From: Octopus sinensis
Taxonomy: Eukaryota
Direction: 5' to 3'
DNA: 64,000 nucleotides
Assembly: GCF_006345805.1 (NCBI RefSeq)
Contig: NW_021833290.1
Span: 1-64,000 of the forward strand
Every line of letters begins with the position of its first letter. Position 1 is the stretch's first letter. The notes under the pieces are model-generated. The model saw only the letters and a program-made list of their open reading frames with translations. It searched no databases and was not told the origin of the DNA. The position numbers and the translations under genes are program-made. Of the stretch, positions 11,246 to 64,000 are shown piece by piece.

Positions 11246-11298
11246 TGAGCTGATGAGAGAAGGGTCGATTTTGGCTAATCTTGAAACGTACGTACTCA
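11246..11298 (+). ncRNA. Type I hammerhead ribozyme motif (inverted arm)
   Basis: Identical core. Confidence 0.85.
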
Positions 11299-24900: not shown

Positions 24901-25146
24901 ATTTCATGTGGCTTTTCTTAACTCCTAAGTTAAGCAATTCCTGGGAATTGTTCAAAACTTGGGAGATATTGCGCCGCAGTTGACTTTCAGTCATTTCGCT
25001 AAATACTGTACAGTAAATAGCAAATATTTTATTTCTGTTTGAGCTGAAATAAAAAATAAATACATACATGTATGTCGGTATGTATGTATGTATGTAGCTA
25101 GCTAGCTAGCTAGAAATATAATACATACTATATAGATATATATATA

Positions 25147-44500: not shown

Positions 44501-44578
44501 AAGAAGAAAAGAAGAAGAAGAAGAGAAGAAGAAGAAGAAGGAGAAGAAGAAGGAGAGGGATAATAATAATAATAATAA

Positions 44579-44609
<31 letters not shown>

Positions 44610-47600
44610 AAGAAGAAGAAGAAGAAGAAGAAAAGAAGAAGAAGAAGAAGAAGAAAAGAAGAAGAAGAACAAAAACTTCAACAACAATAACAAAAAAATT
44701 ATCTCGGTGGAATTGTGGATAAATAACCACACGGCACCACAGAATCAACAGAACAATGTGAAATAAAATAGTAGCTAAAACTTATATTAATAGTGCAGAT
44801 ACAGACATACATATGAACATACACATATATTTTCAGGAATAACATTTTTATGCAGACAATTATCAACTGACAGTCATTGACATGTTCAGACTCAATCAAA
44901 TAAATATAACACGAATATGAGAACTGAATATGATTTACAGTAATAGAGAGTGAGAAAACATGGAAATAAGGGGATATTAAATTTAAAGACATAGTATATT
45001 CCTCATGTATAAACGACAACATTGAAAGAACTTACAATTCCTCTAAGCTGTGAAGGCCTTGAAACATCTCCTTTTCAATCCTTGAAATTTTATTGTTGCC
45101 AAGGTTTCTGAAGCAGGAAACAATATTGGTTAGATTGACATAGTGTGAATTGCGATAACATATTCAATATTGTTCTTTATGAAAAGGGAAAAAATATAGG
45201 AAAATAACACAAGAAGAAGAGGAACAGGAAAGAGATTGAGAAGAAGAAGAAGCCAAAGAAGAAGGGGAGGTGGGGAAGGGGAAACGGAGAAGACAAGGAG
45301 GAAGTGGAGGGGGAGAAGAAGTAGAAGAAGGAGGAGTTGGAGGAGGAGGAACGAAGGAGAGGAAAATGGCTGAGGACGGAGTAGGACAAGGAGATGAAGG
45401 AGGGGTGGGGGAAATAGGAGGAGGAGCAGAGGGTAGAGTAGAAGAAAAAGATGTAAATTATTAAAAAGAGGAGGAGGGTGAGGAGACGAAGAAGAATAGG
45501 CAAAAGAGAAGAAAAAGAAGAAGAAGAGGAAAAAGAAGAAGAAGAAGAAAGCGATGAAGAAGGAGGAGGAAGAGGAGAAGGAGGGAGAGAATTACAAAAA
45601 AGAAGATGAGAAAAAAAAGAAGAAGGAGGAGAAGGAGGAGAAGTAGAAGAAAGTAGAAGTAGGAGTGGAAGAAAAAGAGGAAGAAGAAAGAGGATAAGGA
45701 GGGGGAGGGGAAAGTAAGAATTACAAGAAGGAGGAGGAGGAGGAGAAGAAGAAGAAAAGAAGAAGAAGAAGAAGCAGAAGAAGAAAAAGGAGGAGGAGTA
45801 GAGGTAGAAGAAGAGGAAGAAGAACAGGAAGCTGTAGAAGAAAGAGAAGACGGAAGAAGAGGCAAGAGGTGGAGGAGGAGGATGAAGGGGAAGAAGAAGT
45901 TAGAGAAAAAGAAAAAAAGAAGAAGAAGGAGGAGGAGAATAACAAAATGAAACTATGAAGAAGAAAGAGCCGAAAGAGGAGAAGTAGATGAAGAAATAGA
46001 AAGTAGAATAAGAAGAAGTAGAGGAAAAAGAAAAATAAGGAGGAAGATGAGGAGGAGAAGTACAAGAAGAAGAAGAAGAAGAAGAAGAAGAAGAAGAAGA
46101 AGGAGAAGAAGAAGAAGAAGGAGAAGAAGAAGGAGGAGGAGGAGGAGGAGGAGAAGAAGAAGAAGTAGAAGTAGAAGAAGAAAGAAGAAAAAGAAGAAGA
46201 AAAGAAGACGAAGAACAAGAAGAAGGAAAAGGAGGAGGATGAAGGGGAAGAAGAAGAGAAAGGAGGAGGATGAGAAGAATATGAAGAAGTAGAAAGTGTA
46301 GAAGAGGTAGAAGACGAAGAAAAAAAGAAGTCGTAGAAAGAGAAGAAGAAAAGGAAAATGATGGAGGAAGACGGGGAACAGAAGTAGAAGAAGAAGACGA
46401 AGAAGGAGAAGAAGAAGGAGAATAAGAATTAGAAGAAGAAGAAGAAAAAGGAGCAAGAGAGGAGAGGGGTGGAGATGGACGAGAATTACAAGAAGAAAAA
46501 GGAGGGGTGGGGTGGTGAGAGGAGGAAGTGAATTACAAGAAGTAAATGTAGATGAAGAAGAAGAGAATAAAATTAGAAGAAGAAAAGAAAGAGGAGGAGG
46601 TGGAGGAGGAGAAGAAGAAGAATAGTTTAAAAGAAGGAGAAGAAGAAGAAATTGAAGAAGAGAAGAAAAAGAAGGAGGAGGATGATGAGCAGGAGGTGAG
46701 GCGGAGGAAGGAGAAGACGAAGAAGAAGAAGAAGAAGAAGAAGAAGAAGAATAGTTTAAAAGAAGAAGGAGAAGAAGAAGAAAATGAAGAAGAAGAGAAG
46801 AAAGTAAGGATAGGAGGAGGCATGAGGTTGGCTAAGGAATAAGAAGAAGGAAGACTAAGACTAAGAATATAAGAAGAAGACGACGACGACGAAGAATAAG
46901 AATAATAAGAAGAAGAGTATAAGGAAGAATAAAGAATAGAAAAGAAGAAGAAGAAGAAAAAGACGAAGACGAAGAAGAAGAAGAAAGGAAGAAGAAGAAG
47001 GGGAGTAGAAGAAAAAGAAGAAGAAGAAGAAGAAGAAAGAAGTTATATTGAAAATCATGGTGTTGAAGACGAAACTGAAATTGTTCTTAAAATATCAGGA
47101 AATAATTCAAGGATAGATCGATAAATTTTGGGCGAGAAGACATGGCTGAAAAATCATGGAATATACGGAATCAGAAATCAACATATTCAAATGCACTCAT
47201 ACGCATTCTTATATTCATAGTATCAACGACGGAATGCGGTATGCACACTCACATCACACATATTCCCACTCACCCTTGTGGAAATATGGTGAGAGAGATT
47301 ATTTCATATCGCTTCATTGTCAGAAGAATATTAGAAAACACACGCTTACAAGAAATATATCAGCAGTTTAATTGTATCAGGCCAAATATTCGAGCTTACA
47401 AGTACAGTATGTATTTCAGGTTTACAGATAGAATGTATGTGACTATATTATTCGAATATATATTTTCCGCTTCCAATTTAGTTGCTCTATTACATAAATA
47501 ACGTGAAGTGAATGACAAAATTCGAAGTTGAATGATAATATCGAAACATGAAGGAGAATATTGAAATAGGAAATGGAGGAGGATGTAAAATATAAAATAA

Positions 47601-50600
47601 AGGAATAATATATTCACATTTCACACAGAACTACACTTATATATGAACATACACATATACTTCAGCTAAAAATATTTGATGCAAACATGTAAACTCACAA
47701 ACGTTACCATTTCTAATACAAATTCATATCAAAATCATTGAAATTGGGGAACAAAATGAGTTATTTAGATGCGAATTGAAACGAAGCAAGTACAAGAAAG
47801 GAACATTATATTTTTCCTATTATTTCACATTTTCTCTCAAATTCTCTCTCTTTCTTTCACATTGTCTCGCTCTCTCATATTCTTCTTTGTATATTCCTAA
47901 ATCGTGTTGATTCTACAAATTCGAATTGATTTTGTTTGGTGGAGTCTGAAATTTTATACATTTGTGAGCTTATATATCAGCATCAATTATTACATTCGGA
48001 AAATAATATCAAGAAACTGAAGAACTTACAATTCTGTTAAATTGCAAAGCCCCGTGAATACACCTTCTTTGATGGTTGCAATGTTGTTGGAACCAATATT
48101 TCTATAGCAGTAAAGAAAGAGTAAAATAGATTATATGGAAAATATTTGTGATACGACATCAAACACTGTGACTTCAGAATGAAAGGAAGAAAAAGAAGAA
48201 ATATAACGAAGAAGAAAAAGAAGAAGAAGGAGAAGAAGAAGAAGAAGAAGAAGAAGAAGAAGAGAAGGTAGATGAAGAGAAGAAGAAGAATAAAAAGAAG
48301 AATAAGGAGGAGGAAAAGGAGAAGAAGAAGAAGAAGAAGAAGTAGAAGAAAACGTAGAAGAAGAAAGGAGAAGATAAAGGAGAAGAAGACCTAGAAGAAG
48401 AAAAAGAAGAAGAGGAGGCGGAGGAGGCGGAGGAGGCGGAGGAGGCGGAGGAGTCGGAGGTGGAGGAGAGGTGGGGATGTTAGGAGGAGGACAAAGGAAT
48501 GGATGACTGAGGAGGGGCAGCTGGGGATAGCAGCAGAAGGAGCAGGAAGAGCAGGAGGATGAGTATAAGAGGAAGAATTGGAAGAGAATGGAAAAGAGGG
48601 AGACCATTGAAGAAGCAGAAAGTACAGAGAAGAAAAAGAACAAGAAAAAAAGAAGGAAAAGAAGAAGACAAAGAAGAAGTAGAACAGGAAGAAAAGTAAC
48701 AAGAAGAAGAAGAAGATGAAGTAGAAGAAGAATAAGAGGAAGAAGAAGAAGAAGAAGACGACGAAGAAGAAGAGGAACATGCAGGAGATGAAGAAGGAAA
48801 GAAGAAGACGAAGAAGATGAAGAAGAAAAATAGAAGAAGAGAAAGAAGAAATTAAAGAAAAAGGAGGATGAGTAGGACGAAGAGGGGAGGTTGAGGAGAA
48901 GAATTGCAATAAGAAGAAGAAGAAAAAGGAGAAGGAGGTGGAGGAGGAGGGGGAATAGGAGAATTACAAGAAGAAGAACAAAACAACAACAATAACAAAA
49001 AAATTATCTCGGTGGAAGTGTGGATAAATAACCACACGGCACCACAGAATCAACAGAACAATGTGAAATAAAATAGTAGCTAAAACTTATATTAATAGTG
49101 CAGATACATACATACATATGAACATACACATATATATTTTCAGGAATAACATTTTTATGCAGACAATTATCAACTGACAGTCATTGACATGTTCAGACTC
49201 AATCAAATAAATATAAGACGAATATGAGAACTGAATATGATTTACAGTAATAGAGAGTGAGAAAACATGGAAATAAGGGGATATTAAATTTAAAGACATA
49301 GTATATTCCTCATGTATAAACGACAACATTGAATGAACTTACAATATCTCTAAGTTGTGAAGGCCTTGAAACATCTCTTTTTCAATCCTTGAAATTTTAT
49401 TGAAGGAAAGAGATCTGAAGCAGGAAACAATATTGGTTAGATTGACATAGTGTGAGTTGCGATAACATATTCAATATTGTTCTTTATGAAGAGGGACAAA
49501 ATTATAGGAAAATAATACAAGAAGAAGGGGAACAGGAAAGAGTTTGAGGAGAAGAAGAAGACAAAGACGAAGGGGATGAGCGGAAGGGGAAACGGAGAAG
49601 ACGAGGAGGAAAAGGAGGGGGGAGAAGAAATAGGAGGAGTTCGAGGAGGAGGTGGGGAGGAGAAGAAAAAGCTTGAGGTCGGAAGAGGACAAGGAGATGC
49701 AGGAGGGGTGGGGGAAATAGGAGGAGGAGCAGAGGGTAGAGTAGAAGAAAAAGATGTAAATGATTAAAAAGAGGAGGAGGAGGATGAGGAGACGAAGAAG
49801 AATAGGTAAAAGAAAAAGAAGAAGAAGAGGAAAAAGAAAAAGAAGTAGAAGAAGGCGATGAAGAAGGAAGAGGAAGGGGAGAAGGAGGGAGAGAATTACA
49901 AAAAAGAAGATGAGGATAAAAAGAACGAGAAGGAGAAGGAGGAGAAGTAGAAGAAAGTAGAAGTGGGTTAGGAAGAAAAAGAAGAAGAAGAAGGAGAAGT
50001 AGAAGAAGAATAAATGAAGTAGAAGAAAGAGAAGTTGAAGAAAAAGAAAAATAAATAGGAAGATGAGGAGGAGAAGTAGAAGAAGAACAACAACAACAAT
50101 AACAAAAAATTTATCCTGGTGGAAGTGTGGATAAATAACCACACGGCACCACAGAATCAAGAGAACAATGTGTAAGAAAATAGTAGCTAAAACTTGTATT
50201 AATAGTGCAGATACATACATACATATGAACATACACATATATATTTTCAGGAATAACATTTTGATGCAGACAATTATCAACTGACAGTCATTGACATGTT
50301 CAGACTCAATCAAATAAATATAAGACGAATATGAGAACTGAATATGATTTACAGTAATAGAGAGTGAGAAAACATGGAAATAAGGGGATATTAAATTTAA
50401 AGACATAGTATATTCCTCATGTATAAACGACAACATTGAAAGAACAATTTCTCTAAGTTGTGAAGGCCTTGAAACATCTCTTTTTCAATCCTTGAAATCT
50501 TATTGTTGCGAAGACCTCTGAAGCAGGAAACAATATTGGTTAGACTGACATAGTGTGAATTGCGATAACATATTCAATATTGTTCTTTATGAAAAAGAAC

Positions 50601-53600: not shown

Positions 53601-55286
53601 CAGAAAGTACAGAGAAGAAAAAGAAGAAGAAAAAAAGAAGAAGAAGAAGAAGAAGAAGAAGAAGAAGAAAAATAGAAGAAGAATACAAATAAGTAGAAAA
53701 ATAAGAAGAAAAAAGAAGGCAAAGAAGAAGACAAAAAAGAAGTAGAACACGAAGAAAAGTAACAAGAAGAAGAAGTAGATGAAGTAGAAGAAGAAGAAGA
53801 CGACGAAGAAGAAGAGGAACATGTAGGAGATGAAGAGGGAAAGAAGAAGACGAAGAAGATGAAAAAAAAGAAAAATAGAAGAAGAGAAAGAAGAAATTGA
53901 AGAAAGAGTAGGATGAGTAGGACGAAGAGGGGAGGTTGAGGAGGAGAATTGCAATAAGAAGAAGAAAAAGGAGGAGAAGGAGGTGGAGCAGGAGGGAGAA
54001 TAGGAGAATTACAAGAAGAAGAACAAAACAACAACAACAACAATAAAAAAAATTTATTTCGGTGGAAGTGTGGATAAATAACCACACGGCACCACAGAAT
54101 CAAGAGAACAATGTGTAAGAAAATAGTAGCTAAAACTTATATTAATAGTGCAGATACATACATACATATGAACATACACATATATATTTGCAGGAATTAC
54201 ATTTTTATGCAGACAATTATCAACTGACAGTCATTGACATGTTCAGACTCAATCAAATAAATATAAGACGAATATGAGAACTGAATATGATTTACAGTAA
54301 TAGAGAGTGAGAAAACATGGAAATAAGGGGATATTAAATTTAAAGACATAGTATATTCCTCATGTATAAACGACAACATTGAATGAACTTACAATTTCTC
54401 TAAGTTGTGAAGGCCTTGAAACATCTCCTTTTCAATCCTTGAAATTTTATTGCTGTCAAGAGATCTGAAGCAGGAAACAATATTGCTTAGATTGACATAG
54501 TGTGAATTGCGATAACATATTCAATATTGTTCTTTATGAAAAGGGACAAAATTATAGGAAAATAATACAAGAGGAACAGGAAAGAGATTGAGGAGAAGAA
54601 GAAGACGAAGAAGGGGATGAGGGGAAGCGGAAAAGAAGAAGACTAGGAGGAAAAGGAGGGGGAGTAGAAGTAGAAGAAGGAAGAGTTGGAGGAGGAGGAG
54701 GGGAGAAGAAGAAGAAGGAGGAGGACTGAAGAGGACAAGGAGATGAAGGAGAGAAAGGAACATAGGAGGAGGATGGGCAGAGGAAAAGAAGACAAAGAAG
54801 AAGAGGAGGAGGGGAAGGGGAAAATAAGAAGACAAGGAGGAAGAGGAGTTGGGAGAAGAAGTAGAAGGAGGAGGAGGAGAAGGATGAGTAGGAGGAGTAG
54901 GCGGAGATGAGGAGAAGTAGGTTGAGGACGGGGGAGGACAATGAGATGCAGGAGGGGGAATAGGAGGAGGAGGAGGAATGGGAGGAGTAGAAGAAGAAGA
55001 TGTAGAAGATTAAAAAGAGGAGGAAGAAAAAGAAGATATAGAAGAATGAAGGGGATGGAGAGGAGAAGAATAATAAGAAGAAGAAGCAGGAAAAAGAAGA
55101 GGAAGAAGAAGTAGATGAAGAAGAAGAAGAAGAAGAAAAAGAAGAAGGAGAAGGAAATGGAGGAAAAGAGATGGATGAGGAGGAAGGGGAAGGAGAAGAA
55201 GGAGAAGAAGAAGAAGAACAACAACAACAACAAGAATAAGAAGAAGAAGTAGGAGGAAGAGGAGGAGAATAACAAAATGAAGAAGA

Positions 55287-55317
<31 letters not shown>

Positions 55318-58300
55318 AAGAAGGAGGAGGAAAAGTAGAAGAAGAAAAGAACAAAAAGAAGAAGAAGACGACGACGACGAAGAAGAAGTAGAAGAAGAAG
55401 AAGGAGAAGAAGAAGAAGAAGAAGTAAAAGAAGAAGAAGAAGAAGAAGAAGAAGAAGAAGAAGATACGTTGAAAATCATGGTGTTCAAGACGAAACTGAA
55501 AATGTTGTCATAATATCAGGAAATAATTCAAGGATAGAGCGGTAAATTTTGGGCGAGAAGACATGGCTGAAAAATCAGGGAATATACGGAATCAGAAATC
55601 AACATATTCAAACGCACTCATTCGCATTCTTATAGTCATAGTATCAACGACGGAATGCGCTATGCACACTTACATCACTCATAATCCCACTCACACTTGT
55701 GGAAATATGGTGAGAGAGATTATTTATTTCATATCGCTTCATTGTCAGAAGAATATTAGAAAACACACGCTTACAAGAAATATATCAGCAGTTTAATTGT
55801 ATCAGGCCAAATATTCCAGCTTACAAGTACAGAAAGTATTTCAGGTTTACAGATAGAATGTATGTGACTATATTATTCGAATATATATTTTCCGCTTCCA
55901 CTTCAGTTACATAAATAACGTGAAGTGAATGACAAAATTCGAAGTTGAATGATAATATCGAAACACGAAGGAGAATATTGAAATAAGAAATGGAGGAGGA
56001 TGTAAAATATAAAATAAAGGAATAATATAGTCACATTTCACACAGAACTACACTTATATATGAACATACACATATACTTCAGCTAAAAGTATTTGATGCA
56101 AACATGTAAACTCACAAACGTTACCATTTCTAATACAAATTCATATCAAAACCTTTGAAATTTGGGGAACAAAAATGAGTTATTGAGATGCAAATTGAAA
56201 CAAAGCAACTACAATAAAGGAACATTGTATTTTTCCTATTATTTCACTTTCTCTCTCAAATTCTCTCTCTTTCTTTCACATTGTCTCGCTCTCTCATATT
56301 CTTTTTGTATCTTCCTAAATCGTATTCATTCTACAAATTCGAATTGATTTTGTTTGGTGCAGTCTGAAAGTTTATACATTTGTGAGCTTATATGTCAGCA
56401 TCAATTATAACTTTCGGAAAATAGTATCAAGAAATTAAACGAACTTACAATTCTTTTAAATTTGAAAGCCCCGTGAATGTACCTTCTTTGATGGTTGAAA
56501 TGTTGTTCTCGTACAGATCTCTATAGCAGTAAAGAAAGAGTAAAATAGATTATATGGAAAATATTTGTGATTCGATATCAAACACTGTGACTTCAGAATG
56601 AAAGGAAGAAAAAGAAGAAAGATAACGAAGAAGAAGAAGAAGAAGAAGAAGATTAAGACAGGAAAAGAAGAAGAAGAAGAAAGGAAAAGAAGAAGAAAAA
56701 GAAAGAAAAAGGAGAAGAAGAAGCAGTAGTAGAAGAAAAAGAAAAGTAGAAGAAGGGGAATTAGGGACGAGGTGGAGGATGTGGGGGTGGAGCAGAGGTG
56801 GGGAGGTTAGGAGGAGGACAAAGGAAGGGATGCCTGTTCAGGGGGCCGCTGAGGGTAGCAGCTGAAGGAGCAGGAAGAGCTGGAGACTGAGAATAAGAGG
56901 GAGAATTGGCAGAGAATGGAAAAGAGGGAGACCAGTGACGGAGCATAAAGTACAGAGAAGAAAAAGAAGAAGAAGACAAAGAAGAAGAAGAAGAACAAAA
57001 TTAGAAGAGGAAGAAGGAGGAGGAGAAGAAGTAGAAGAAGAAGCAGAAGAAGAAGAAAACAAAGAAAATTAAGAAGAAGAAGAAAAAAGAAGGCAAAGAA
57101 GAAGTAGAACACGAAGAAAAGTAACAAGAAGAAGAATAAGTAGAAGAAGAAGAAGAGGAAGAAGAAGAAGACAAAGAAAAGGAAGAAGAAGAAGAAGAGG
57201 AAGAAGAAGAAGACGACGAAGAAAAGGAACATGAAGGAGATGGAGAAGGAAAGAAGAAGACGAAGAAGATGAAGAAGAAGAAAAATAGAAGAAGAGAAAG
57301 AAATTGAAGAAAAAGGAGGATGAGTAGGACGAAGAGGGCATGTTGAGGAGGAGAATTGCAATAAGAAGAAGAAAATGAGGAGAAGGAGGTGGAGGAGGAG
57401 GGGGAATAGGAGAATTACAAGAAGAAGAACAAAAACAACAACAACAACAACAAAAATATTATCTCGGTGGAAGTGTGGATAAATAACCACACGGCACCAC
57501 AGAATCAAGAGAACAATGTGTAAGAAAATAGTAGCTAAAACTTATATTAATAGTGCAGATACAGACATACATATGAACATACACATATATATTTTCAGGA
57601 ATAACATTTTTATGCAGACAATTATCAACTGACAGTCATTGACATGTTCAGACTCAATCAAATAAATATAAGACGAATATGAGAACTGAATATGATTTAC
57701 AGTAATAGAGAGTGAGAAAACATGGAAATAAGGGGATATTAAATTTAAAGACATAGTATATTCCTCATGTATAAACGACAACATTGAAAGAACTTACAAT
57801 TCCTCTAAGCTGTGAAGGCCTTGAAACATCTCCTTTTCAATCCTTGAAATTTTATTGTAGGAAAGATCTCTGAAGCAGGAAACAATATTGGTTAGATTAA
57901 CATAGTGTGAATTGCGATAACATATTCAATATTGTTCTTTATGAAGAGGGACAAAATTATAGGAAAATAATACAAGAAGAAGAGGAACAGGAAAGAGATT
58001 AAGGAGAAGATGAAGAAGAAAGAGAGGAGGGGAAGGGGAAAAGAAGAAGTCAAGGAGGAAGAGTAGGGGGGAGAAGAAGTAGAAGAAGGAGGAGTTGGAG
58101 GAGGAGGAGGAGGAGGAGGGGAGGTGAAGTAGGATGAGGACAGGGAAGGACAAGGAGATGCAGGAGGGGGAGGAAAATAGGAGGAGGTGCAGAGGGTAGA
58201 GTATAAGAAGATATAGAAGATTAAAAGTGGAGGAAGAAAAAGAAGTAGAAGGAAGAGGAGGGTGAAAAGAAGAAAAAGAAGAAGAAGAAAAAGAAGAAGT

Positions 58301-61300
58301 AAAACGAGAAGAAGAAGCGGAAAATGAAGAAGAAGTAGAAGCAGGAAAAAAGGAGAAGAAGGAAGAAGAGAAAAATAGGTGGAGGCGGAGGTGGAAGAGG
58401 AAGGGGAAGAAGAAGAAGACAGATGAGAAGGAGGAGGAGGAGGAGGAGGAGGAAGGGGAAGTAGAAGAAAAAGAAGGAGGAGAAGGAGGAGGAGGAAGAG
58501 TAGTAGAAGAAGAAGAATAAGATGAAGAAGAAGAAGATGACACTTTGAATATCATGGTATTCAAGATGAATCTGGAAATGTTCTCAAGATATCAGGAAAT
58601 AATTCAAGGATAGATCGAGAAATTTTGGGCGAGAAGACATGGCTGAAAACTCAGGGAATATACGAAATCAGAAATCAACATATTCAAATGCACTCATACG
58701 CATTTTTATTTTCATAGTATCAACAACGGAATGCGGTATGCACACTCACATCACACATAATCCCACTCACACTTGTGGAAATATGGTGAGAGAGATTATT
58801 TATTTCATATCGCTTCATTGTCAGAAGAATATTAGAAAACACACGCTTACAAGAAATATATCAGCAGTTTAATTGTATCAGGCCAAATATTCCAGCTTAC
58901 AAGTACAGAAAGTATTTCAGGTTTACAGATAGAATGTATGTGACTATATTATTCGAATATATATTTTCCGCTTCCACTTCAGTTACATAAATAACGTGAA
59001 GTGAATGACAAAATTCGAAGTTGAATGATAATATCGAAACACGAAGGAGAATATTGAAATAAGAAATGGAGGAGGATGTAAAATATAAAATAAAGGAATA
59101 ATATAGTCACATTTCACACAGAACTACACTTATATATGAACATACACATATACTTCAGCTAAATGTATTTGATGCAAACATGTAAACTCACAAACGTTAC
59201 CATTTCTAATACAAATTCATATCAAAATCATTGGAATTTGGGGGAAAAATGAGTTATTGAGATGCGAATTGAAACAAAGCAACTACAATAAAGGAACATT
59301 ATATTTTTCCTATTATTTCACTTTCTCCCCCAAATTCTCTCTCTTTCTTTCACATTGTCTCGCTTTCTCCTATTCTCTTTGTATCTTCTTAAATCTTGTT
59401 CATTCTACAAATTTGAATTGATTTTGTTTAGTTCAGTCTGAAATTTTATACATTTGTGAGCTTATATATCAGCATCAATTAATACTTTCGGATAATAGTA
59501 TCAAGAAATTAAACGAACTTACACTGTTTTTAAATTGGAAAGCCCCGTGAATACACCTTCTTTGATGGTTGAAATGTTGTTCCCGAAAAGATATCTATAG
59601 CAGTAAAGAAAGAGTAAAATAGATTATATGGAAAATATTTGTGATACGACATCAAACACTGTGACATCTGAATGAAAGGAAGAAAAAGAAGAAAGATAAC
59701 GAAGAAGAAAAGGAAGAAGAAGGAGGAGGAGGAGGCGAAGAGGAAGAAAAGTAGAAGAAGAAGAATTAGTAGAAGAAGAAAGGAGAAGAGGTAGTAGAAG
59801 AAAAAGAAGCGAAAGAAGGAATACCTGGAAAAAGGAGGAGGAGGATGATAAAAGGGAAGAAGAAGTAGAAGAAAAAGTAAAAGAAGAAGAAGAAGGGGAT
59901 GGGAGGAAAAGAATAACAAGAAGAAGAAGATAAATATAAGAAAGACGAGAGGAGGAGGAGGAGAAGTAGGTGAAGAAGTAGAAATAAGAAGAAGAAGAAG
60001 GAGAAGAAGAACAACAACAAGTCGAAATAGAAGGAGGATGAGGAGGGGGAGGGGAAGAAGAAATATTGCAAGAAGAAGGAAGGAAAGAACAGGAAGAAGA
60101 AGATGTAGAAGTAGTAGAAGCAAGAAAAAGAAGAAAGATAACGAAGAAGAAAAGGAAGAAGAAGGAGGAGGAGGAGGCGAAGAGGAAGAAAAGTAGAAGA
60201 AGAAGAATTAGTAGAAGAAGAAAGGAGAAGAGGTAGTAGAAGAAAAAGAAGCGAAAGAAGGAATACCTGGAAAAAGGAGGAGGAGGATGATAAAAGGGAA
60301 GAAGTAGAAGAAAAAGTAAAAGAAGAAGAAGAAGGGGATGGGAGGAAAAGAATAACAAGAAGAAGAAGATAAATATAAGAAAGACGAGGAGGAGGAGGAG
60401 GAGAAGTAGATGAAGAAGTAGAAATAAGAAGAAGAAGAAGGAGAAGAAGAACAACAACAAGTCGAAATAGAAGGAGGATGAGGAGGGGGAGGGGAAGAAG
60501 AAATATTGCAAGAAGAAGAAGGAAGGAAAGAACAGGAAGAAGAAGATGTAGAAGTAGTAGAAGCAAGAAAAAGAAGAAGATGAAGGAGGTGGAGGAGAAG
60601 GAGATAGAGAATAACAAAAACAGAAGTGAAGAAGAAGAAGGAGGAGGAGGAGGAGTAGAAGAAGAAGTAGAAAGAAGAAGAGGAAGAAAAAAAGAAAAAG
60701 ACAAAGAAGAAGAAGAAGGAAGGGGAGGAAAAAGGAGGAGGAGGAGTGTGAAGGAGGAGAATAAGTAGGAGAACATGAAAAAGAAGAAGAAGATGAAGGA
60801 GGAGGAGGTTGAGAATAACAAAAAGAAGAATATAAGAAGAAGAAAGAGGAGTAGGAGGAGAAGTAGATGAAGAAGTAGAAAGTAGTGGTAGAAGAAGACA
60901 TAGAAGAAGAAGAAAAAAGAAGTAGAAGAATGAGAAGAAGAAATGAAAAAGAAGAAGGAAGGAACAGAAGAAGAAGAATTAGAAGAAGAAGCAGAAGAAG
61001 AAGAAAATGAAGCAGGAGAGGAGGGGAGGAGGAGAATAACAAGAAGAAAAAGGAGGAGGCGCGGAGAGGATTGGGTAGAAAAAAAGAAGAGGAAAAAAGA
61101 AGTAGAAGAAGGAAGGGGAAAAAGGAGGAGGAAGAAGATGAAAGGGAAAAAGTAGGGGTAGAAGAAAAAGAAGAAGAAGAAGAACAAGGAGGAGGAGGAG
61201 GAGGAGTAGATGAAGAAGTTGAAAGTAGAAGAGGAAGAAGTGGAAGAAGAAGAAAAAAGGAGAAGCGAGAGAAGAAGAAGGTTAAGAAGAAGTAGTAGAG

Positions 61301-61612
61301 AGAGAAGAAGAAGAAGAAAAAGAAGAAGAAGAAGGAGGAGAAGAAGGTGCAGCAGGAGGAGAGGAACAGAAGGAAGAAGAAGAAAAAGAAGAAGAAGAAG
61401 AAGAAGAAGAAGAAGAAAAAAGGAGAAGCGAGAGAAGAAGAAGAAGGAGGAGGAGGAGGAGAAGTAGATGAAGAAGAAGAAAAAGAAGAAGAAGAAGAAG
61501 GAAAAGAAGAAGAAAACGAAGGAAAAGAAGAAGAAGGCAGAATACGAAATGACAAAAAGATGAAGAAGAAGGCGGAGAAGGAGAAATAGAATAAGAAAAA
61601 GAACAAAAAGAA

Positions 61613-61644
<32 letters not shown>

Positions 61645-63840
61645 AAAATATAAAGCGGGAGAAGAAGAAGAAGAAGAACAACAACAACAACAACAACAAC
61701 AAAAAGAAGAAAAAGAGGAAGAAGAAGAAGAAGAAGTGGAAAAAGAAAAAGATAAAGAGGGAGAAGAAGAAGAACAACAACAAAAAGAAGAAGAAGAAGA
61801 AGAAGAAGAAGAAGAAAAGATAAAGAGGGAGAAGAAGAAGAAGAAGAAAAAGAAGAAGAAAAAGAAGAAGAAGAAGAAGAAGAAGAAGATGACAATTTAA
61901 AAATGATGGTGTTCATGATGAAACTGAAAATGTTCTCATAATATCAGGAAATAATTCAAGGATAGAGCGATAAATTTTGGGCGAGAAGACATGGCTGAAA
62001 AATCAGGGAATATACGGAATCAGAAATCAACATATTCAAATGCACTCATACGCAATCTTATATTCATAGTATCAACGACGGAATGCGGTATGCACACTTA
62101 CATCACACATATTCCCACTCACCTTTGTGGAAACATGGTGAGAGAGATTATTTATTTCATATCGCTTCATTGTCACAAGAATATTAGAAAACACACGCTT
62201 ACAAGAAATATATCAGCAGTTTAATTTATCAGGCCAAATATTCCAGCTTACAAGTACAGTAAGTATTTCAGGTTTACAGATAGAATGTATGTGACTATAT
62301 TATTCGAATATATATTTTCCGCTTCCACTTCAGTTACATAAATAACGTGAAGTGAATGACAAAATTCGAAGTTGAATGATAATATCGAAACACGAAGGAG
62401 AATATTGAAATAAGAAATGGAGGAGGATGTAAAATATAAAATAAAGGAATAATATAGTCACATTTCACACAGAACTACACTTATATATGAACATACACAT
62501 ATACTTCAGGTAAAAATATTTGATGCAAACATGTAAACTCACAAACGTTACCATTTCTAATACAAATTCATATCAAAATCATTGAAATTTGGGAACAAAA
62601 ATGAGTTATTGAGATGCGAATTGAAACAAAGCAACTACAATAAAGGAACATTATATTTTTCCTATTATTTCACTTTCTCTCTTAAATTCTCTCTCTTTTT
62701 TCACATTGTCTCGCTCTCTCCTATTCTCTTTGTATCTTCCTAAATCGTATTCATTTTACAAATTTGAATTGATTTTGTTCGGTGTAGTCTGAAATATTAT
62801 ACATTTGTGACCTTATATATCAGCATCAATAATATCAAGAAACTGAACGAACTTAAAATTCTTTTAAATGTGAAAGCCCCGTGAATGCTCCTTCTTTGAT
62901 GGTTGCAATGTTGTTGTTCCACAGTTCTCTATAGCAGTAAAGAAAGAGTAAATTAGATTATATGGAAAAAATATGTGATACGACATCAAACACAGTGACA
63001 TCTGAATGAAAGGAAGAAAAAGAAGAAAGATAACGAAGAAGAAGAAGAAGAAGAAGAAGAAGGGGAAGAAGAAGAAGAAGAAGGAGAAGAACAAGAAGAA
63101 GAAGAAGAAGAAGAAGAAGAGGAAGTAAAAGAAGACGAAGACAAAGAAAAGGAAGAAGAAGAAGAAGAAGAGGAAATAGAAGAAGACGACAAAGAAGACG
63201 GAACATGAAGGAGATGAAGAAGGAAAGAAGAAGAGGAAGTATAAAAAGAAGAAAAAGAAGAAGAGAAAGAAGAAATTGAAGAAAAAGGAGGATGAGTAGG
63301 ACGAAGAGGGGAGGTTGAGGAGGAGAATTGCAATAAGAAGAAGAAAATTAGGAGAAGGAGGTGGACGAGGAGGGGGAATAGGAGAATTACAAGAAGAAGA
63401 ACAAAAACAACAACAACAACAACAAAAATATTATCTCGGTGGAAGTGTGGATAAATAACCACACGGAACCTCAGAATCAACAGAACAATGTGTAAGAAAA
63501 TAGTAGCTAAAACTTATATTAATAGTGCAGATACAGACATACATATGAACATACACATATATATTTTCAGGAATAACATTTTTATGCAGACAATTATCAA
63601 CTGACAGTCATTGACATTTCAGACTCAATCAAATAAATATAAGACGAATATGAGAACTGAATATGATTTACAGTAATAGAGAGTGAGAAAACATGGAAAT
63701 AAGGGGATATTAAATTTAAAGACATAGTATATTCCTCATGTATAAACGACAACATTGAAAGAACTTACAATTTCTCTAAGCTGTGAAGGCCTTGAAACAT
63801 CTCTTTTTCAATCCTTGAAATTTTATTGTAGCCAAGATCT
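21816..63840 (-). CDS. Multi-exon gene model (5' end outside window): LRR array - LRRCT - Ly6/uPAR-like - SEA-like - HRM; adhesion-GPCR-like ectodomain
   Basis: 21 minus-strand exons with AG acceptors and mostly GT donors. Phases chain LRR(2-2) > LRRCT(2-1) > Ly6a(1-0) > Ly6b(0-1) > 1-0 > 0-2 > 2-1 > HRM(1-2) > HRM(2-1) after restoring four exons with 1-2 nt homopolymer losses. HRM motif C-x-WPxTxxGxTAxIPC...ATRHC...C-x4-GxWxxPDxSxC. The 31086-31174 exon does not fit the chain. Confidence 0.85.
23371..23485 (-). CDS. HRM domain exon 1 ([38 protein letters not shown])
   Basis: gcttctttttcag / gttcgt, 115 nt, phase 1-2; C...WPxT..G.TA..PC...ATR.C motif of GPCR hormone-receptor domains. Confidence 0.88.
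24889..25043 (-). CDS. SEA-like segment exon 3 ([51 protein letters not shown])
   Basis: tttttatttcag / gtaagt, 155 nt, phase 2-1, open. Confidence 0.85.
25251..25728. mobile_element. Penelope-like non-autonomous cassette with 107-bp inverted terminal copy, in (TA)n
   Basis: 25251-25357 is the reverse complement of 25622-25728; contains a hammerhead motif; a related copy lies at ~16808-17110. Confidence 0.65.
25335..25377 (-). ncRNA. Minimal type I hammerhead motif, family 4 variant
   Basis: ccac-CTGAAGA-ttgtc(ggagca)gacat-GAAA-catttg-TA-gtgg; loop II differs from 16888-16930 while the stem is largely kept. Confidence 0.68.
27479..28451 (+). mobile_element. 5'-truncated copy of the same RTE family with target-site duplication
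   Basis: Starts inside the ADDA motif and has the same 3' end; flanked by aatacatgcgat at 27467-27478 and 28452-28463. Confidence 0.93.
28528..28580 (-). CDS. SEA-like segment exon 2 ([18 protein letters not shown])
   Basis: cttttgcag / gtaagc, 53 nt, phase 0-2. Confidence 0.82.
28750..29048. mobile_element. MITE-like element with ~90-bp imperfect terminal inverted repeats
   Basis: tattctgaaacgcaggataatgctaat...tctgtcggcggccag versus ctggccgccgacaga...attagcatcatcctgcgtttgagaata. Confidence 0.7.
29570..29651 (-). CDS. SEA-like segment exon 1 ([13 protein letters not shown][K][14 protein letters not shown])
   Basis: ccatag / gtgagt; 82 nt versus 83 nt in the intact paralog at 16410-16492 (one A lost in an A-run). 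SEA label is tentative. Confidence 0.78.
30145..30450 (-). mobile_element. Paralogous R4/Dong-like fragment
   Basis: Same family and same flank as 20300-20870; part of the local duplication. Confidence 0.75.
30641..30823 (-). CDS. Ly6/uPAR-like second-half exon ([56 protein letters not shown]...)
   Basis: tattattacag / gtaagt; CC-x3-LCN three-finger terminal motif; +1 A needed for phase-1 exit. Confidence 0.85.
31086..31174 (-). CDS. Exon [29 protein letters not shown] (degenerate Ly6-like first half)
   Basis: 89 nt, ctattttaag / gtaagc, open, phase 1-0, joins the next exon in frame. Confidence 0.6.
32785..32874 (-). CDS. Ly6/uPAR-like first-half exon ([20 protein letters not shown][N]EVTSCPGTE)
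   Basis: ttgtattctgtag / gtaaac; LQCxxC...C...CP motif; needs +2 A in an AA run to stay open. Confidence 0.7.
33471..33605 (+). mobile_element. RTE-type LINE 3' tip (C2H2-like [21 protein letters not shown] plus 3' UTR) in (TATG)n
   Basis: Zinc-finger terminus typical of RTE ORF2. Confidence 0.55.
33641..34790 (-). mobile_element. Degenerate R4/Dong-like LINE RT region
   Basis: [36 protein letters not shown]. Confidence 0.8.
34855..35065. repeat. (TATG)n microsatellite; others include (TATG)n 33368-33470, (GAT)n ~39040-39185, (CA)n ~3230-3306 and (TA)n at ~6690-6800, 11474-11520, 18205-18350, 19214-19300, 25130-25250, 26330-26397, 27125-27330, 30065-30137 and 41466-41550
   Basis: Direct reading. 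Confidence 0.95.
36257..36462 (+). mobile_element. Second tRNA-derived SINE family (ggcgg..agctggcagaa...ttcaaattcc...); other copies at ~20938-21148(-), 22752-22940(-), 22965-23130(-) and 40222-40390(+)
   Basis: A/B-box-like head and shared body gaggtcgactttgc...ggggtcga across five copies. Confidence 0.75.
36840..37110 (-). mobile_element. Degenerate RTE-like LINE fragment (RT thumb region)
   Basis: [18 protein letters not shown]...EMGFLRK...GHAIRM. Confidence 0.6.
37555..37712 (-). CDS. LRR C-terminal cap exon ([52 protein letters not shown])
   Basis: 158 nt, ttattattacag / gtaagt, phase 2-1, open, N-x-CxC...C...C LRRCT pattern. Confidence 0.88.
38316..38641. mobile_element. MITE-like element with ~77-bp terminal inverted repeats
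   Basis: gtataatagccatctcaatatggctaaccac...ggagatcatcgtc versus gacgatgatctcc...gtggttagccatattgagatggatattatac. Confidence 0.75.
38765..38970 (+). mobile_element. R4/Dong-like RLE C-terminus
   Basis: [12 protein letters not shown]...[14 protein letters not shown]. Confidence 0.7.
39210..39345 (+). mobile_element. R4/Dong-like fragment
   Basis: HGQFEK...[25 protein letters not shown]. Confidence 0.65.
40891..40960 (-). CDS. Terminal LRR exon ([14 protein letters not shown][FLFLPSIVK])
   Basis: Acceptor tgtctctttttcag, donor gtaagc. 70 nt; restoring one T in each of two TT runs gives a 72-nt LRR. Confidence 0.75.
42345..43400 (-). mobile_element. Penelope-like element RT relic interrupted by the CR1
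   Basis: KNH...[21 protein letters not shown]...YCRYID...[26 protein letters not shown]. Confidence 0.65.
42725..43156 (+). mobile_element. CR1-clade LINE 3' end with (TAAAC)n tail
   Basis: LSYEGR...[11 protein letters not shown]...GHSEKL...[10 protein letters not shown]...FKVSLD. Confidence 0.88.
45036..45107 (-). CDS. LRR exon A1 ([23 protein letters not shown])
   Basis: 72 nt, cag acceptor, gtaagt donor, phase 2-2. Confidence 0.93.
48030..48101 (-). CDS. LRR exon B1 ([23 protein letters not shown])
   Basis: 72 nt, tag acceptor, gtaagt donor, phase 2-2. Confidence 0.93.
49343..49414 (-). CDS. LRR exon A2 ([23 protein letters not shown])
   Basis: 72 nt, cag acceptor, gtaagt donor, phase 2-2. 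Confidence 0.93.
50446..50517 (-). CDS. LRR exon A3 ([23 protein letters not shown]), donor damaged
   Basis: 72 nt, cag acceptor. A 4-nt deletion (gaacttacaatt > gaacaatt on + strand) turns donor gtaagt into gttctt. Confidence 0.8.
53157..53228 (-). CDS. LRR exon B2 ([23 protein letters not shown])
   Basis: 72 nt, tag acceptor, gtaagt donor, phase 2-2. Confidence 0.93.
54393..54464 (-). CDS. LRR exon A4 ([23 protein letters not shown])
   Basis: 72 nt, cag acceptor, gtaagt donor, phase 2-2. Confidence 0.93.
56449..56520 (-). CDS. LRR exon B3 ([23 protein letters not shown])
   Basis: 72 nt, tag acceptor, gtaagt donor, phase 2-2. Confidence 0.93.
57798..57869 (-). CDS. LRR exon A5 ([23 protein letters not shown])
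   Basis: 72 nt, cag acceptor, gtaagt donor, phase 2-2. Confidence 0.93.
59523..59594 (-). CDS. LRR exon B4 ([23 protein letters not shown])
   Basis: 72 nt, tag acceptor, gtaagt donor, phase 2-2. Confidence 0.93.
62857..62928 (-). CDS. LRR exon B5 ([23 protein letters not shown]), donor mutated
   Basis: 72 nt, acceptor ctttactgctatag intact; donor reads ttaagt instead of gtaagt. Confidence 0.8.
63769..63840 (-). CDS. LRR exon A6 (L|[23 protein letters not shown]|L)
   Basis: 72 nt, acceptor tttcctgcttcag, donor gtaagt, phase 2-2, LxxLxLxxNxI consensus. Confidence 0.93.
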
Positions 63841-64000
63841 CTGAAGCAGGAAACAATATTGGTTAGATTAACATAGTGTGAATTGCGATAACATATTCAA
63901 TATTGTTCTTTATGGAAGGAGACAAAATTATAGGAAAATATACAGAAGAAGAGGAACGAAAGAGATTAAGGAGAAGAAGAAGAAGAAGAAGAAGAAGAAG

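What the first reader, a model, noticed from the sequence alone, without database searches (positions are those of the whole stretch)
45036..63840. Tandem cassette array of single-LRR exons: a candidate receptor-diversification locus
Seen: the GAA-rich 20 kb that the ORF track renders as poly-L/S/F junk hides 11 exons of exactly 72 nt, each one LRR and each phase 2-2. Each was copied with 0.5 or 1.1 kb of its own intron (types A and B), in transcript order A B B A B A B A A B A, and the array continues past the window edge. Established: symmetric exons can be added, lost or skipped without breaking frame, and LRR-module rearrangement underlies lamprey VLRs and has been described for brown-algal ROCO LRR exons. 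Inference: this is a rapidly remodelling LRR solenoid whose length and composition may differ between alleles, individuals or splice isoforms. I do not recognise this as described for a cephalopod adhesion GPCR.
Basis: partly seen in the sequence, partly recalled or inferred. Interest (0 to 1): 0.92.

Follow-up and report, generated by a model that had tools for sequence, protein, structure and literature searches.

The report
Octopus LRR-exon cassette array, hypervariable
This stretch of Octopus sinensis DNA is the ligand-binding end of a recently duplicated adhesion-receptor-family gene, where eleven near-identical one-repeat mini-exons differ almost only in the few codons predicted to touch a ligand; the exons are real and annotated, but this copy looks partly broken and nothing points to a lamprey-style rearranging system.

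Summary
On the minus strand at 45036-63840 there are 11 exons of exactly 72 nt, each in phase 2-2 and each encoding one 24-residue LRR. They come in two types (A x6, B x5), in the stated order. Each sits in its own conserved intron flank (about 0.57 kb for A, 1.34 kb for B), and ~90%-purine spacers separate the units.

The window is an unplaced 76.8-kb scaffold of Octopus sinensis. RefSeq already annotates the gene as "slit homolog-like", with isoforms that differ in 24-aa steps. It belongs to the octopus-specific family of LRR-bearing adhesion GPCRs. A full-length relative has LRR-HRM-GPS-7TM-Death, and the expansion was published in 2019. One 72-nt exon per LRR is a family-wide, older trait.

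What appears undescribed:
- The codons for LRR positions 2, 4 and 5 are 4-25 times more diverse than the introns and the rest of the exon.
- The array differs in exon number and order from a paralogue whose flanks are only 2.3% diverged.

Three redundant contig versions keep the same exon number and order, so allelic copy-number change is not supported. There is no sign of VLR-like somatic assembly. This copy carries several frame-breaking lesions. Verdict: a new variant of a known kind, of moderate to high interest.

The parts
63769..63840 (-). Cassette exon A63 (LRR: [24 protein letters not shown]), 72 nt, phase 2-2, AG/GTAAGT
   Evidence: used in RefSeq isoforms X1, X9, X12 of the redundant contig
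62857..62928 (-). Cassette exon B62 ([23 protein letters not shown]). The frame is open, but the donor is TTAAGT in this contig and GTAAGT in the two sister contigs
59523..59594 (-). Cassette exon B59 ([23 protein letters not shown])
   Evidence: first cassette of RefSeq isoforms X2 and X4 on this contig
57798..57869 (-). Cassette exon A57 ([23 protein letters not shown]). In sister contig C10451 the exon and about 280 nt of upstream intron are replaced by a tract 6.5-8% divergent
56449..56520 (-). Cassette exon B56 ([23 protein letters not shown])
54393..54464 (-). Cassette exon A54 ([23 protein letters not shown])
53157..53228 (-). Cassette exon B53 ([23 protein letters not shown]); present in all RefSeq models of the locus
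50446..50517 (-). Cassette exon A50 ([23 protein letters not shown]). The donor is weakened to GTTCTT by a 4-nt GTAA deletion here and in C10451; it is intact in C12785
49343..49414 (-). Cassette exon A49 ([23 protein letters not shown]). It is the last cassette in every RefSeq model and is spliced directly to the capping exon at 37.7 kb
48030..48101 (-). Cassette exon B48 ([23 protein letters not shown]). It is intact but used in none of the 16 RefSeq models of the locus that were decoded
45036..45107 (-). Cassette exon A45 ([23 protein letters not shown]). It is intact but used in none of the 16 RefSeq models of the locus that were decoded
43570..64000 (.). Array-coextensive low-complexity spacers of (GAA/AGA/GGA)n type. 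There are 11 tracts of 0.27-1.9 kb between the A/B units, each 87-92% purine on the + strand and so polypyrimidine in the pre-mRNA
40891..40960 (-). Terminal LRR exon ([14 protein letters not shown]...). It is degenerate: 70 nt instead of 72 because of two 1-nt deletions, and it has an in-frame TAA. The lesion is in all three contig versions; the exon is intact in paralogue C25
37555..37712 (-). C-terminal capping exon of the LRR domain ([17 protein letters not shown]...ILDYSQCQ, 4 Cys). It enters in phase 2
   Evidence: no Pfam LRRCT hit
32785..32874 (-). Cys-rich module, exon a ([20 protein letters not shown]...). An extra T creates an immediate TGA in this contig and in C12785; the exon is intact in C10451 and C25
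30653..30823 (-). Cys-rich module, exon b ([11 protein letters not shown]...[11 protein letters not shown]; the Ly6/uPAR-like CCxxxxCN ending gives only a weak Pfam hit, E 0.078). One A is missing before the donor in all three contigs, which shifts the exit phase relative to C25
21796..23489 (-). Two exons (23373-23489 and 21796-21957) that together encode a hormone-receptor (HRM) domain, as in class-B/adhesion GPCRs
   Evidence: (HRM 30.3 bits, cut-off 26.2)

Best explanation
The region encodes the LRR ectodomain of a young paralogue in the octopus-specific family of LRR-bearing adhesion GPCRs. A full-length O. bimaculoides relative has the architecture LRRNT-LRRn-cap-Cys-rich-HRM-GAIN/GPS-7TM(-Death).

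**Shown**
- Each 24-residue LRR is its own 72-nt phase-2 exon, and this is a family-wide, older trait.
- In this subfamily two exon+intron units, A (~0.65 kb) and B (~1.4 kb), separated by (GAA)n-type spacers, have been amplified in tandem. The units occur in about 157 copies at more than 20 contigs.
- Introns and scaffold codons of the units are 93-98% alike within a type. The codons for LRR positions 2, 4 and 5 (and 24), which are the x residues of LxxLxLxxN on the concave beta-sheet, are close to saturated with differences.
- RefSeq models include 5-8 of the 12 cassettes in various combinations.

**Inferred**
- Unequal crossing-over and gene conversion between units keep the array homogeneous and reshuffle its order. 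The shared spacers and flanks probably help this.
- Diversifying selection, or retention of old variants, keeps the ligand-contact codons different.
- Because all exons are symmetric, skipping them gives solenoids of different length and surface without breaking frame. Individual cassettes can also decay without killing the gene.
- This copy has lesions in the terminal LRR exon and in both Cys-rich exons. It most likely yields only truncated, secreted LRR proteins, or it is turning into a pseudogene.
For: - **Exons and frame:**
- **Organism and gene models:** (P0004 lies on a 76,762-bp contig, which is this contig's length; XP_036355417-9).
- **Family architecture:** (P0287: LRR, GPS, 7tm_2, Death). 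HRM lies in the window. PMC6408891 describes octopus-specific adhesion-GPCR 'group 3', some members with LRR or Death domains.
- **Exon-per-LRR in a diverged O. bimaculoides relative:** 15 exons of 72 nt, AG/GT, phase 2.
- **Copy number:** 46 A cores and 111 B cores, against 0 in reversed-pattern controls. Exon 1 has about 31 copies at 83% identity or more.
- **Hypervariability:** pi over the 9 hypervariable nucleotides is 0.42 (A) and 0.61 (B). The rest of the exon gives 0.04 and 0.12, and the introns 0.02-0.11. Mann-Whitney p = 2e-10 and 2e-8.
- **Codon-level contrast:** in type A, pN is 0.52 against pS 0.09 in hypervariable codons, and 0.024 against 0.068 in the other codons.
- **Protein level:** entropy over 54 distinct units peaks at positions 2, 4, 5 and 24.
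- **Remodelling:** C25 flanks are 2.2-2.4% diverged, but cassette number and order differ and no cassette pairs are orthologous.
- **Isoforms:**
- **Lesions:**
Against: - No transcript reads were examined. The RefSeq isoforms are computed models, and reads from about 20 near-identical paralogues and redundant contigs can mis-map. Several models need odd intra-exonic splice sites.
- In type B the synonymous sites inside the hypervariable codons are also highly diverged (pS 0.52). Part of that diversity may therefore be old sequence preserved while the flanks were homogenised, rather than fast recent adaptive change.
- GPS and 7TM exons are not on this contig, so 'adhesion GPCR' for this very gene rests on relatives.
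- Whether C9761 and C25 are paralogues or very divergent structural haplotypes cannot be settled, because C9761 is unplaced.
- Only 23 cassettes from two loci entered the diversity statistics.
Confidence: 0.75

Rival explanations
1. The hypervariable patches are old and the homogeneity is young. The cassettes diverged long ago. Gene conversion has since homogenised the introns and scaffold codons, and selection only rejects conversions that overwrite the contact codons. There would then be no accelerated substitution, only maintained diversity.
For: - Intron trees are star-like, and positional orthology between two loci with 2.3%-diverged flanks is lost.
- Hypervariable motifs are shared between loci in different array positions: RW, YE, GN, SY.
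- Synonymous sites inside B hypervariable codons are also diverged.
- A 350-nt divergent tract in one haplotig looks like a conversion tract.
Against: - The variable patch is only about 12 nt long and is flanked on both sides by near-identical sequence right up to the AG. Conversion tracts would have to end there repeatedly.
- In type A, pS in hypervariable codons (0.09) is as low as elsewhere while pN is 0.52.
- No donor was found for the divergent tract.
Confidence: 0.25
2. The splice isoforms are annotation artefacts. The array would be spliced constitutively, or the locus would be barely expressed, and the many RefSeq isoforms would come from RNA-seq reads of paralogues and haplotigs mis-assigned among near-identical cassettes.
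For: - There are three redundant contigs and about 20 paralogous loci at 90-97% identity.
- Chimeric cassettes in the models need intra-exonic splice sites.
- The models differ between redundant contigs of the same locus: 3 isoforms against 13.
Against: - The same pattern, with 5' cassettes variable and 3' cassettes constant, recurs independently at C25.
- Lesioned cassettes (B65 and the terminal LRR exon) must be skipped for any open frame.
- Symmetric 72-nt exons make skipping cost-free.
Confidence: 0.25
3. The array is a VLR-like somatic diversification system. The cassettes would be donors that are copied or rearranged into an expressed gene in somatic cells.
For: Only analogy: LRR cassettes with hypervariable concave residues, and one conversion-like tract between haplotigs.
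Against: - All cassettes are in one orientation and lie between exon 1 and the capping exon.
- Each has a canonical acceptor and, in 10 of 11 cases, a GT donor.
- The germline gene is already complete and open when spliced.
- No inverted or orphan cassettes were seen in the genome-wide hits.
- Cassette number and order are identical in three assembled versions.
Confidence: 0.03
4. The array is an assembly artefact or a non-coding satellite. The units would be a tandem repeat that merely resembles LRR exons, or a collapsed or over-expanded assembly.
For: The locus sits on a small unplaced scaffold, is rich in microsatellites, and exists as three redundant contigs with coincident ends.
Against: - All 11 frames are open, with splice sites at exactly 72 nt, and each cassette has unique contact codons.
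- The structure is identical in three contigs.
- The same exon architecture occurs on chromosome-scale contigs and in O. bimaculoides.
- Protein models exist in RefSeq for three species.
Confidence: 0.03

Closest known systems
Brown-algal (Ectocarpus and kelp) ROCO LRR genes with exon shuffling (Zambounis et al. 2012, PMC3341825; PMC11378527, 2024)
   Same: - Each LRR is a single 72-nt, 24-aa exon.
- The exons are symmetric and can be added, lost or skipped.
- Inactivated LRR exons lie within the arrays.
- Positively selected or hypervariable residues sit on the concave face.
- Gene birth and death are rapid, and alternative splicing is reported.
   Different: - The signalling part is unrelated: ROC-COR GTPase and cytoplasmic there, an extracellular ectodomain of an adhesion-GPCR family here.
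- The LRR register within the exon differs.
- Here the intron is duplicated with the exon and is still 93-98% identical.
- There are two alternating unit types and purine-rich spacers.
- No cassettes were seen on the opposite strand.
- It is an animal, so the resemblance is convergent.
Modular LRR exons of animal genes: Slit and NLR/NLRP3 (Hoss et al. 2019, PMC6642158, citing Little et al. 2002). From my own memory, untested here, the glycoprotein-hormone/LGR receptors also have ~72-75-nt phase-2 LRR exons
   Same: - One LRR, or one LRR unit, per short symmetric exon.
- Exon skipping changes solenoid length without a frameshift.
- The closest solved LRR domains by sequence include LGR4/5, IGFALS, LRIG1, TLR3 and LRRC15.
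   Different: Those arrays are old, with diverged introns, fixed exon number and no recent unit amplification. Hypervariability confined to contact codons against near-identical introns is not a reported feature of them.
Octopus-specific adhesion-GPCR expansion 'group 3' (Ritschard et al. 2019, PMC6408891) and the RefSeq models XP_036355417-9 and XP_036355612-23 ('slit homolog-like') of O. sinensis
   Same: It is the same gene family and in part the same gene. That paper reports LRR in 5 of 22 sequences, a Death domain in one, co-localised paralogues, signs of positive selection, and expression in axial nerve cord, suckers and skin. The RefSeq isoforms already differ by whole cassettes.
   Different: The paper contains nothing on exon structure, cassette units, hypervariable positions or array remodelling: the term 'LRR' occurs 0 times and 'exon' twice, in a figure legend. 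RefSeq names the products after Slit, LRRC15 or chondroadherin.
Lamprey/hagfish variable lymphocyte receptors (VLR)
   Same: LRR modules with hypervariable concave beta-strand residues; diversity arises from combining cassettes.
   Different: VLR germline genes are incomplete and are completed by somatic copying from flanking donor cassettes that lack splice sites. Here the germline gene is complete, the cassettes are ordinary exons, and any combinatorics would be at the RNA level.
Dscam1 / clustered protocadherin recognition codes
   Same: A tandem array of alternative exons encodes variable recognition surfaces of a neuronal or immune cell-surface protein. Octopus also has a protocadherin expansion (discussed in PMC6408891).
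   Different: Inclusion is not mutually exclusive: 5-8 cassettes are used at once. No docking/selector complementarity was found between units, and there is no promoter per exon.

Membership tests
Adhesion GPCR (class B2) | GAIN domain with GPS autoproteolysis motif directly before the 7TM | not testable with these tools
   The contig starts inside the gene. Relatives have it: P0140, P0145, P0166, P0168, P0179 and P0287 carry GPS, and P0166 hits GAIN_ADGRA3.
Adhesion GPCR (class B2) | Secretin-type seven-transmembrane domain (Pfam 7tm_2) | not testable with these tools
   It is not on the 76.8-kb contig. It is present in relatives at 45-70% identity (P0143, P0145, P0166, P0168, P0179, P0287). 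In this copy the frame is already broken upstream.
Adhesion GPCR (class B2) | Extracellular adhesion-type domains plus an HRM domain in the N-terminal region | tested here: met
   LRR_8 E = 5.6e-161. HRM scores 30.3 bits against a cut-off of 26.2 when exons 23373-23489 and 21796-21957 are joined. The exons are 86-98% identical to O. vulgaris 'adhesion GPCR G6-like' proteins.
Extracellular 'typical' LRR domain with Cys caps | Signal peptide, LRRNT (CxC...C), 24-residue LxxLxLxxNxL repeats and a C-terminal Cys cap | tested here: met
   Exon 1 encodes MFHH...ETQA + CKICTC...C, with a weak LRRNT hit (E 0.008). There are 11 repeats of exactly 24 aa. The cap exon has 4 Cys but no Pfam LRRCT hit, so the C-cap is met by pattern only.
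ROCO-type shuffled LRR exon arrays (brown algae) | One 72-nt symmetric exon per LRR, inactivated exons in the array, and concave-face hypervariability | tested here: met
   compared with the text of PMC3341825.
ROCO-type shuffled LRR exon arrays (brown algae) | ROC-COR GTPase domain downstream of the LRRs (homology) | tested here: not met
   Downstream exons encode a Cys-rich module and HRM, and relatives continue into GPS/7tm_2. The case is an analogue, not a member.
VLR-type somatic cassette assembly | An incomplete germline gene, with donor cassettes that lack splice sites, lie outside the gene and occur in both orientations | tested here: not met
   The spliced ORF is complete. Every cassette has an AG, and 10 of 11 have a GT. 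All share one orientation within each locus.
VLR-type somatic cassette assembly | Somatic sequence change relative to germline | not testable with these tools
   This needs tissue-resolved long-read DNA data.
Dscam1-type mutually exclusive exon cluster | Exactly one exon of the cluster per mRNA, enforced by docking/selector RNA pairing | tested here: not met
   Models contain 5-8 cassettes. No significant complementarity exists between A and B units; the best match is a 17-nt hairpin inside the B intron.

The most novel reading that the evidence does not exclude
Octopus may have evolved a germline-encoded but combinatorial recognition repertoire. It would consist of about 20-30 young loci carrying about 150 single-LRR cassette exons with hypervariable contact residues. 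Unequal exchange would reshuffle the cassettes over evolutionary time, and regulated or stochastic exon skipping would sample them in individual cells. The polypyrimidine spacers ahead of each cassette might control that skipping. The result would be a Dscam- or protocadherin-like identity or ligand code on adhesion GPCRs of the arm nervous system, suckers or immune cells.
Probability: 0.25. Interest if true: 0.85.

Novelty: new variant of a known kind. Interest (0 to 1): 0.6.

Why it matters
Cephalopod genomes are known for expanded cell-surface recognition families (protocadherins, GPCRs), but how the ligand-binding diversity is made is largely unknown.

Here the ligand-binding solenoid of an expanded adhesion-GPCR family is built from freshly duplicated one-repeat exons. 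Their introns are nearly identical, while three or four contact codons are almost randomised, and the exons can be skipped in frame. Three layers of diversity therefore become testable: gene copies, cassette shuffling and splicing. The layout also yields a ready-made map of the probable binding residues.

It would be an animal counterpart of the brown-algal ROCO exon-shuffling system, and a convergent echo of the logic of lamprey VLRs without somatic rearrangement.

It also carries a practical warning. These loci are fragmented, redundant and misnamed ('slit homolog', 'chondroadherin-like') in current annotations, so family size and isoform counts in published surveys are unreliable.

Tried and rejected
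1. A strict regex for LxxLxLxxNxL on AG/GT exons found nothing at first, because the exon starts inside the motif. Relaxing it worked.
2. A motif search for a canonical LRRCT (NPxxCxC) found none. The cap exon was located only through RefSeq and O. vulgaris proteins.
3. Surveying all paralogous arrays at DNA level failed. Diversity statistics therefore rest on two loci plus protein-level units.
4. The look-up of encoding contigs had no record for the O. vulgaris and UniRef proteins P0010 and P0168. Two O. bimaculoides loci were obtained instead.
5. The Ly6/uPAR assignment of the Cys-rich module was not confirmed: E = 0.078 once and no hit at E < 0.01.
6. Dscam-like docking/selector RNA pairing between units was not found.
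7. A donor for the divergent A57 tract of contig C10451 was not found; the best match is 92%.
8. Positional orthology between the window and C25 cassettes could not be established.
9. The single-sequence AlphaFold model was good only in the LRR part (pLDDT 65-90; overall 51.9), so I ran no fold search.
10. Literature searches found no paper describing cassette arrays or hypervariable LRR codons in cephalopod adhesion GPCRs.
Full report
**What is there**

The + strand of window 44-64 kb is 74% purine, with a strong GC and AT skew. Repeat analysis resolves two families of dispersed direct repeats inside it. One has six copies of about 645 nt and the other five copies of about 1415 nt, each 75-98% identical within its family.

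On the minus strand every copy contains an open 72-nt segment bounded by AG and GT and read after skipping one base, which is phase 2-2.
- Six segments read [23 protein letters not shown] (type A: 63769, 57798, 54393, 50446, 49343, 45036).
- Five read xLxxNNI[SA]TIKEGxFTGLxxLxx (type B: 62857, 59523, 56449, 53157, 48030).

Two carry blemishes in this contig. B62 has a TT in place of the GT donor. A50 has lost GTAA at its donor, leaving GTTCTT.

All exons end in ..TT and begin with A, so each junction codon is Leu. Spliced to an upstream exon found beyond the window, they give a perfect protein: signal peptide, LRRNT and eleven 24-residue LRRs. That upstream exon lies at contig 69515-69705, encodes MFHH...ETQA + CKICTCNS...C, and ends TT|gtaagt. 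Pfam LRR_8 scores E = 5.6e-161 on the product.

**Where it comes from**

The window is bases 1-64000 of a 76,762-bp unplaced contig of a 2.72-Gb genome. A protein search identifies the organism as Octopus sinensis. It finds RefSeq models on a contig of exactly this length: XP_036355417-9, 'slit homolog 1/2 protein-like isoforms X2-X4'.

Beyond the window there is one more B-type unit at contig 65571-65642. It is disabled: a -1/+1 indel pair gives an in-frame TAA here and in C12785, and it is 73 nt long in C10451. Exon 1 follows it. The array therefore ends 1.7 kb past the window edge.

**The rest of the gene**

Using O. vulgaris and O. sinensis relatives as guides, the minus strand below the array carries these exons:
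- a terminal LRR exon (40891-40960);
- a four-Cys capping exon (37555-37712);
- a two-exon Cys-rich module ending CCVGHLCN (32785-32874 and 30653-30823; only a weak Ly6/uPAR hit);
- three small exons;
- a two-exon HRM domain (23373-23489 and 21796-21957; 30.3 bits against a cut-off of 26.2);
- a second copy of the small-exon module (16.4, 16.0 and 5.7 kb) and an exon at 4.3 kb.

The contig then ends, so GAIN/GPS and 7TM exons cannot be seen.

A full HMMER scan of 1.84 billion representatives with a close O. vulgaris relative (P0010) returns octopus proteins that combine LRR, GPS and 7tm_2, one of them with a Death domain. One O. bimaculoides gene hits GAIN_ADGRA3. This is the octopus-specific adhesion-GPCR expansion 'group 3' of Ritschard et al. 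2019. That paper reports LRR in 5 of 22 sequences, a Death domain in one, co-localised genes, positive selection, and expression in axial nerve cord, suckers and skin (PMC6408891).

**This copy is damaged**

- The terminal LRR exon is 70 nt long with an in-frame TAA in all three assembled versions of the locus.
- Cys-rich exon a has an extra T that creates TGA in two of the three versions. This is where the 257-aa RefSeq products end.
- Cys-rich exon b lacks one A before its donor in all three versions, changing the exit phase relative to the paralogue on C25.
- A LINE-type reverse-transcriptase ORF sits in an intron at 12-15 kb.

The copy probably makes only truncated secreted LRR proteins, or it is decaying.

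**Exon-per-LRR is a family trait; the young array is not**

In a diverged O. bimaculoides relative, 15 LRRs are each a 72-nt AG/GT phase-2 exon. That relative is P0287, 1535 aa, with LRRNT, about 17 LRRs, cap, Cys-rich module, HRM, GPS, 7TM and Death domain. Its repeats and introns are well diverged, it shows a four-repeat super-period, and it has no purine spacers.

The A/B cassettes are different: they are a recent amplification. Conserved 32-nt cores occur 46 times (A) and 111 times (B) in the assembly, against 0 for reversed-pattern controls, on more than 20 contigs. Exon 1 occurs about 31 times at 83% identity or more, six times at 100%. The purine-rich spacers are exactly coextensive with the A/B arrays, both here and on C25.

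**Hypervariable contact codons**

I aligned 23 cassettes from this locus and from C25 with 150 nt of upstream and 300 nt of downstream intron.

| Region | Nucleotide diversity, type A | Type B |
|---|---|---|
| Introns | 0.02-0.07 | 0.10-0.11 |
| 63 scaffold nucleotides of the exon | 0.04 | 0.12 |
| Nine nucleotides for LRR positions 2, 4 and 5 | 0.42 | 0.61 |

The contrast between the nine hypervariable nucleotides and the introns gives Mann-Whitney p = 2e-10 (A) and 2e-8 (B).

By a Nei-Gojobori count, type A has pN 0.52 against pS 0.09 in these codons, and pN 0.024 against pS 0.068 in the others. Type B has pN 0.62 against pS 0.52 in these codons, and pN 0.09 against pS 0.17 in the others.

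Over 54 distinct units taken from family proteins of three Octopus species, entropy peaks at positions 2, 4, 5 and 24. These are the x residues of LxxLxLxxN. By established LRR structural knowledge they line the concave beta-sheet that binds ligands. A single-sequence AlphaFold model places a strand at the start of each 24-residue period, with pLDDT 65-90 in the LRR part.

The contrast with the introns means one of two things. Either replacement at these codons has been far faster than neutral, or old variants are being protected while everything around them is homogenised. The high pS in type B leaves the second possibility open.

**Remodelling: yes between copies, no between assembled haplotypes**

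Contigs C12785 and C10451 are colinear with C9761:23934-76762 at 99.1-99.3% identity, with about 0.2% substitutions. They carry the same cassettes in the same order. They differ in four ways:
- the B62 donor;
- the A50 donor;
- the extra T in Cys-rich exon a;
- a 350-nt tract covering A57 and its upstream intron, which is 6.5-8% divergent in C10451 and has no identical donor in the assembly.

By contrast, the copy on chromosome-scale contig C25 has flanks only 2.2-2.4% diverged on both sides. It nevertheless has 12 intact cassettes plus one broken one, in a different order and with a third subtype.

No cassette pair between the two loci is as close as the flanks. Intron-only trees are star-like, with a few within-locus sister pairs. 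That pattern fits unequal exchange and gene conversion among units. I cannot tell whether C9761 is a paralogue or a very divergent structural haplotype of C25, because C9761 is unplaced.

**Splicing**

The RefSeq models I retrieved number 3 on this contig, 13 on C10451 and 7 on C25, and within each locus they differ in 24-aa steps. Decoding them shows 5-8 cassettes per product at this locus and 8-10 at C25.
- The 3' cassettes B53, A50 and A49 are constant.
- The 5' cassettes B65 to A54 are variable.
- B48, A45 and the broken terminal exon are never used.
- Some 'chimeric' cassettes need an internal GAAG|GT donor in one B exon and an internal AG acceptor in a later one.

These are computed models in a family prone to read mis-mapping, so they are suggestive only. 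No docking/selector complementarity was found between units. In the pre-mRNA each cassette is preceded by a 0.3-1.9 kb polypyrimidine tract about 170-210 nt upstream of its acceptor. I infer, without a test, that this tract could recruit PTB-like repressors, and that at the DNA level it could promote misalignment between units.

**Comparison with what is known**

The closest described system is the brown-algal ROCO family. It has one 72-nt exon per LRR, shuffling, inactivated exons, concave-face positive selection and alternative splicing (PMC3341825; PMC11378527). It is an analogue, not a homologue. Exon-per-LRR modularity with alternative splicing is also known for human NLRs and Slit (PMC6642158).

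The VLR comparison fails on its defining features, and Dscam-type mutual exclusion fails too. The family expansion itself is published and the gene is annotated. I found no paper describing the young cassette units, the hypervariable codons against near-identical introns, or the scrambled arrays.

**Verdict**

It is a new variant of a known kind, with interest about 0.6. The interest lies in the family-wide phenomenon, not in this probably defective copy.

Noticed in passing
window 11923-15124 (- strand): A LINE-type retrotransposon lies inside an intron of the gene, with long ORFs of 364, 305, 196 and 184 aa. The 305-aa ORF hits Pfam RVT_1 (E 4.8e-25). Fragments of a related element lie on the + strand at about 27.3-28.4 kb. 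One O. vulgaris protein model (P0140, residues 843-953) appears to have absorbed such TE sequence.
   Followed up: partly
window 7390-11366: An array of ~550-bp repeats carries the same 73-106-aa ORF (CLLNSTQESMRVETLKNQ...). Three copies lie on the + strand (7390-8810) and four on the - strand (9445-11366), so the block is a large inverted tandem-repeat structure within an intron.
   Followed up: no
window 29543-29652, 28527-28580, 24890-25045 versus 16407-16496, 16017-16070, 5731-5817: A three-exon module (GWTKS..[14 protein letters not shown] / xEHxxxTVTGxFRVExxG / ..[12 protein letters not shown]..) occurs twice along the gene, once on each side of the HRM exons. The same duplication is seen in O. 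vulgaris protein P0009. No Pfam family matched it.
   Followed up: partly
sister contig C10451:33800-34165 (equivalent to window 57792-58167): The A57 cassette and about 280 nt of its upstream intron differ from the window by about 23 substitutions in about 350 nt, against a 0.2% background. The change alters four residues, and no identical donor exists in the assembly. It could be a conversion tract, an old allele or a chimera.
   Followed up: yes
RefSeq isoforms of the locus (B65/B62, B59/B56, B65/B56 chimeras); window 59523-59594 and 56449-56520: Several annotated products contain hybrid LRRs. These require an intra-exonic donor (AAAGAAG|GTGTAT) in one B cassette and an intra-exonic acceptor at the homologous position of a later B cassette. 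The hybrids may be real, or they may be artefacts of paralogue read mapping.
   Followed up: partly
window 55860-56040 (B-unit intron; B-unit positions 656-672 and 814-830 in transcript sense): A perfect 17-nt inverted repeat, a potential hairpin with a ~140-nt loop, lies in the conserved downstream intron of the B unit. It is the only notable complementarity found in or between units.
   Followed up: no
G000 contigs C9761, C12785, C10451: Three assembled versions of the same ~53-kb segment share coincident ends (C9761:23934 = position 1 of both others; C9761:76762 = the end of C10451). This is redundancy in the public assembly, and it inflates gene and isoform counts for this family.
   Followed up: yes
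G000 C27:18.2-18.9 Mb, C29:2.1-3.2 Mb, C2:61.5 Mb: More distant copies of the signal-peptide/LRRNT exon (41-66% identity) form further clusters, at least 7 of them on C27. The wider family may therefore be considerably larger than the A/B-cassette subfamily.
   Followed up: no
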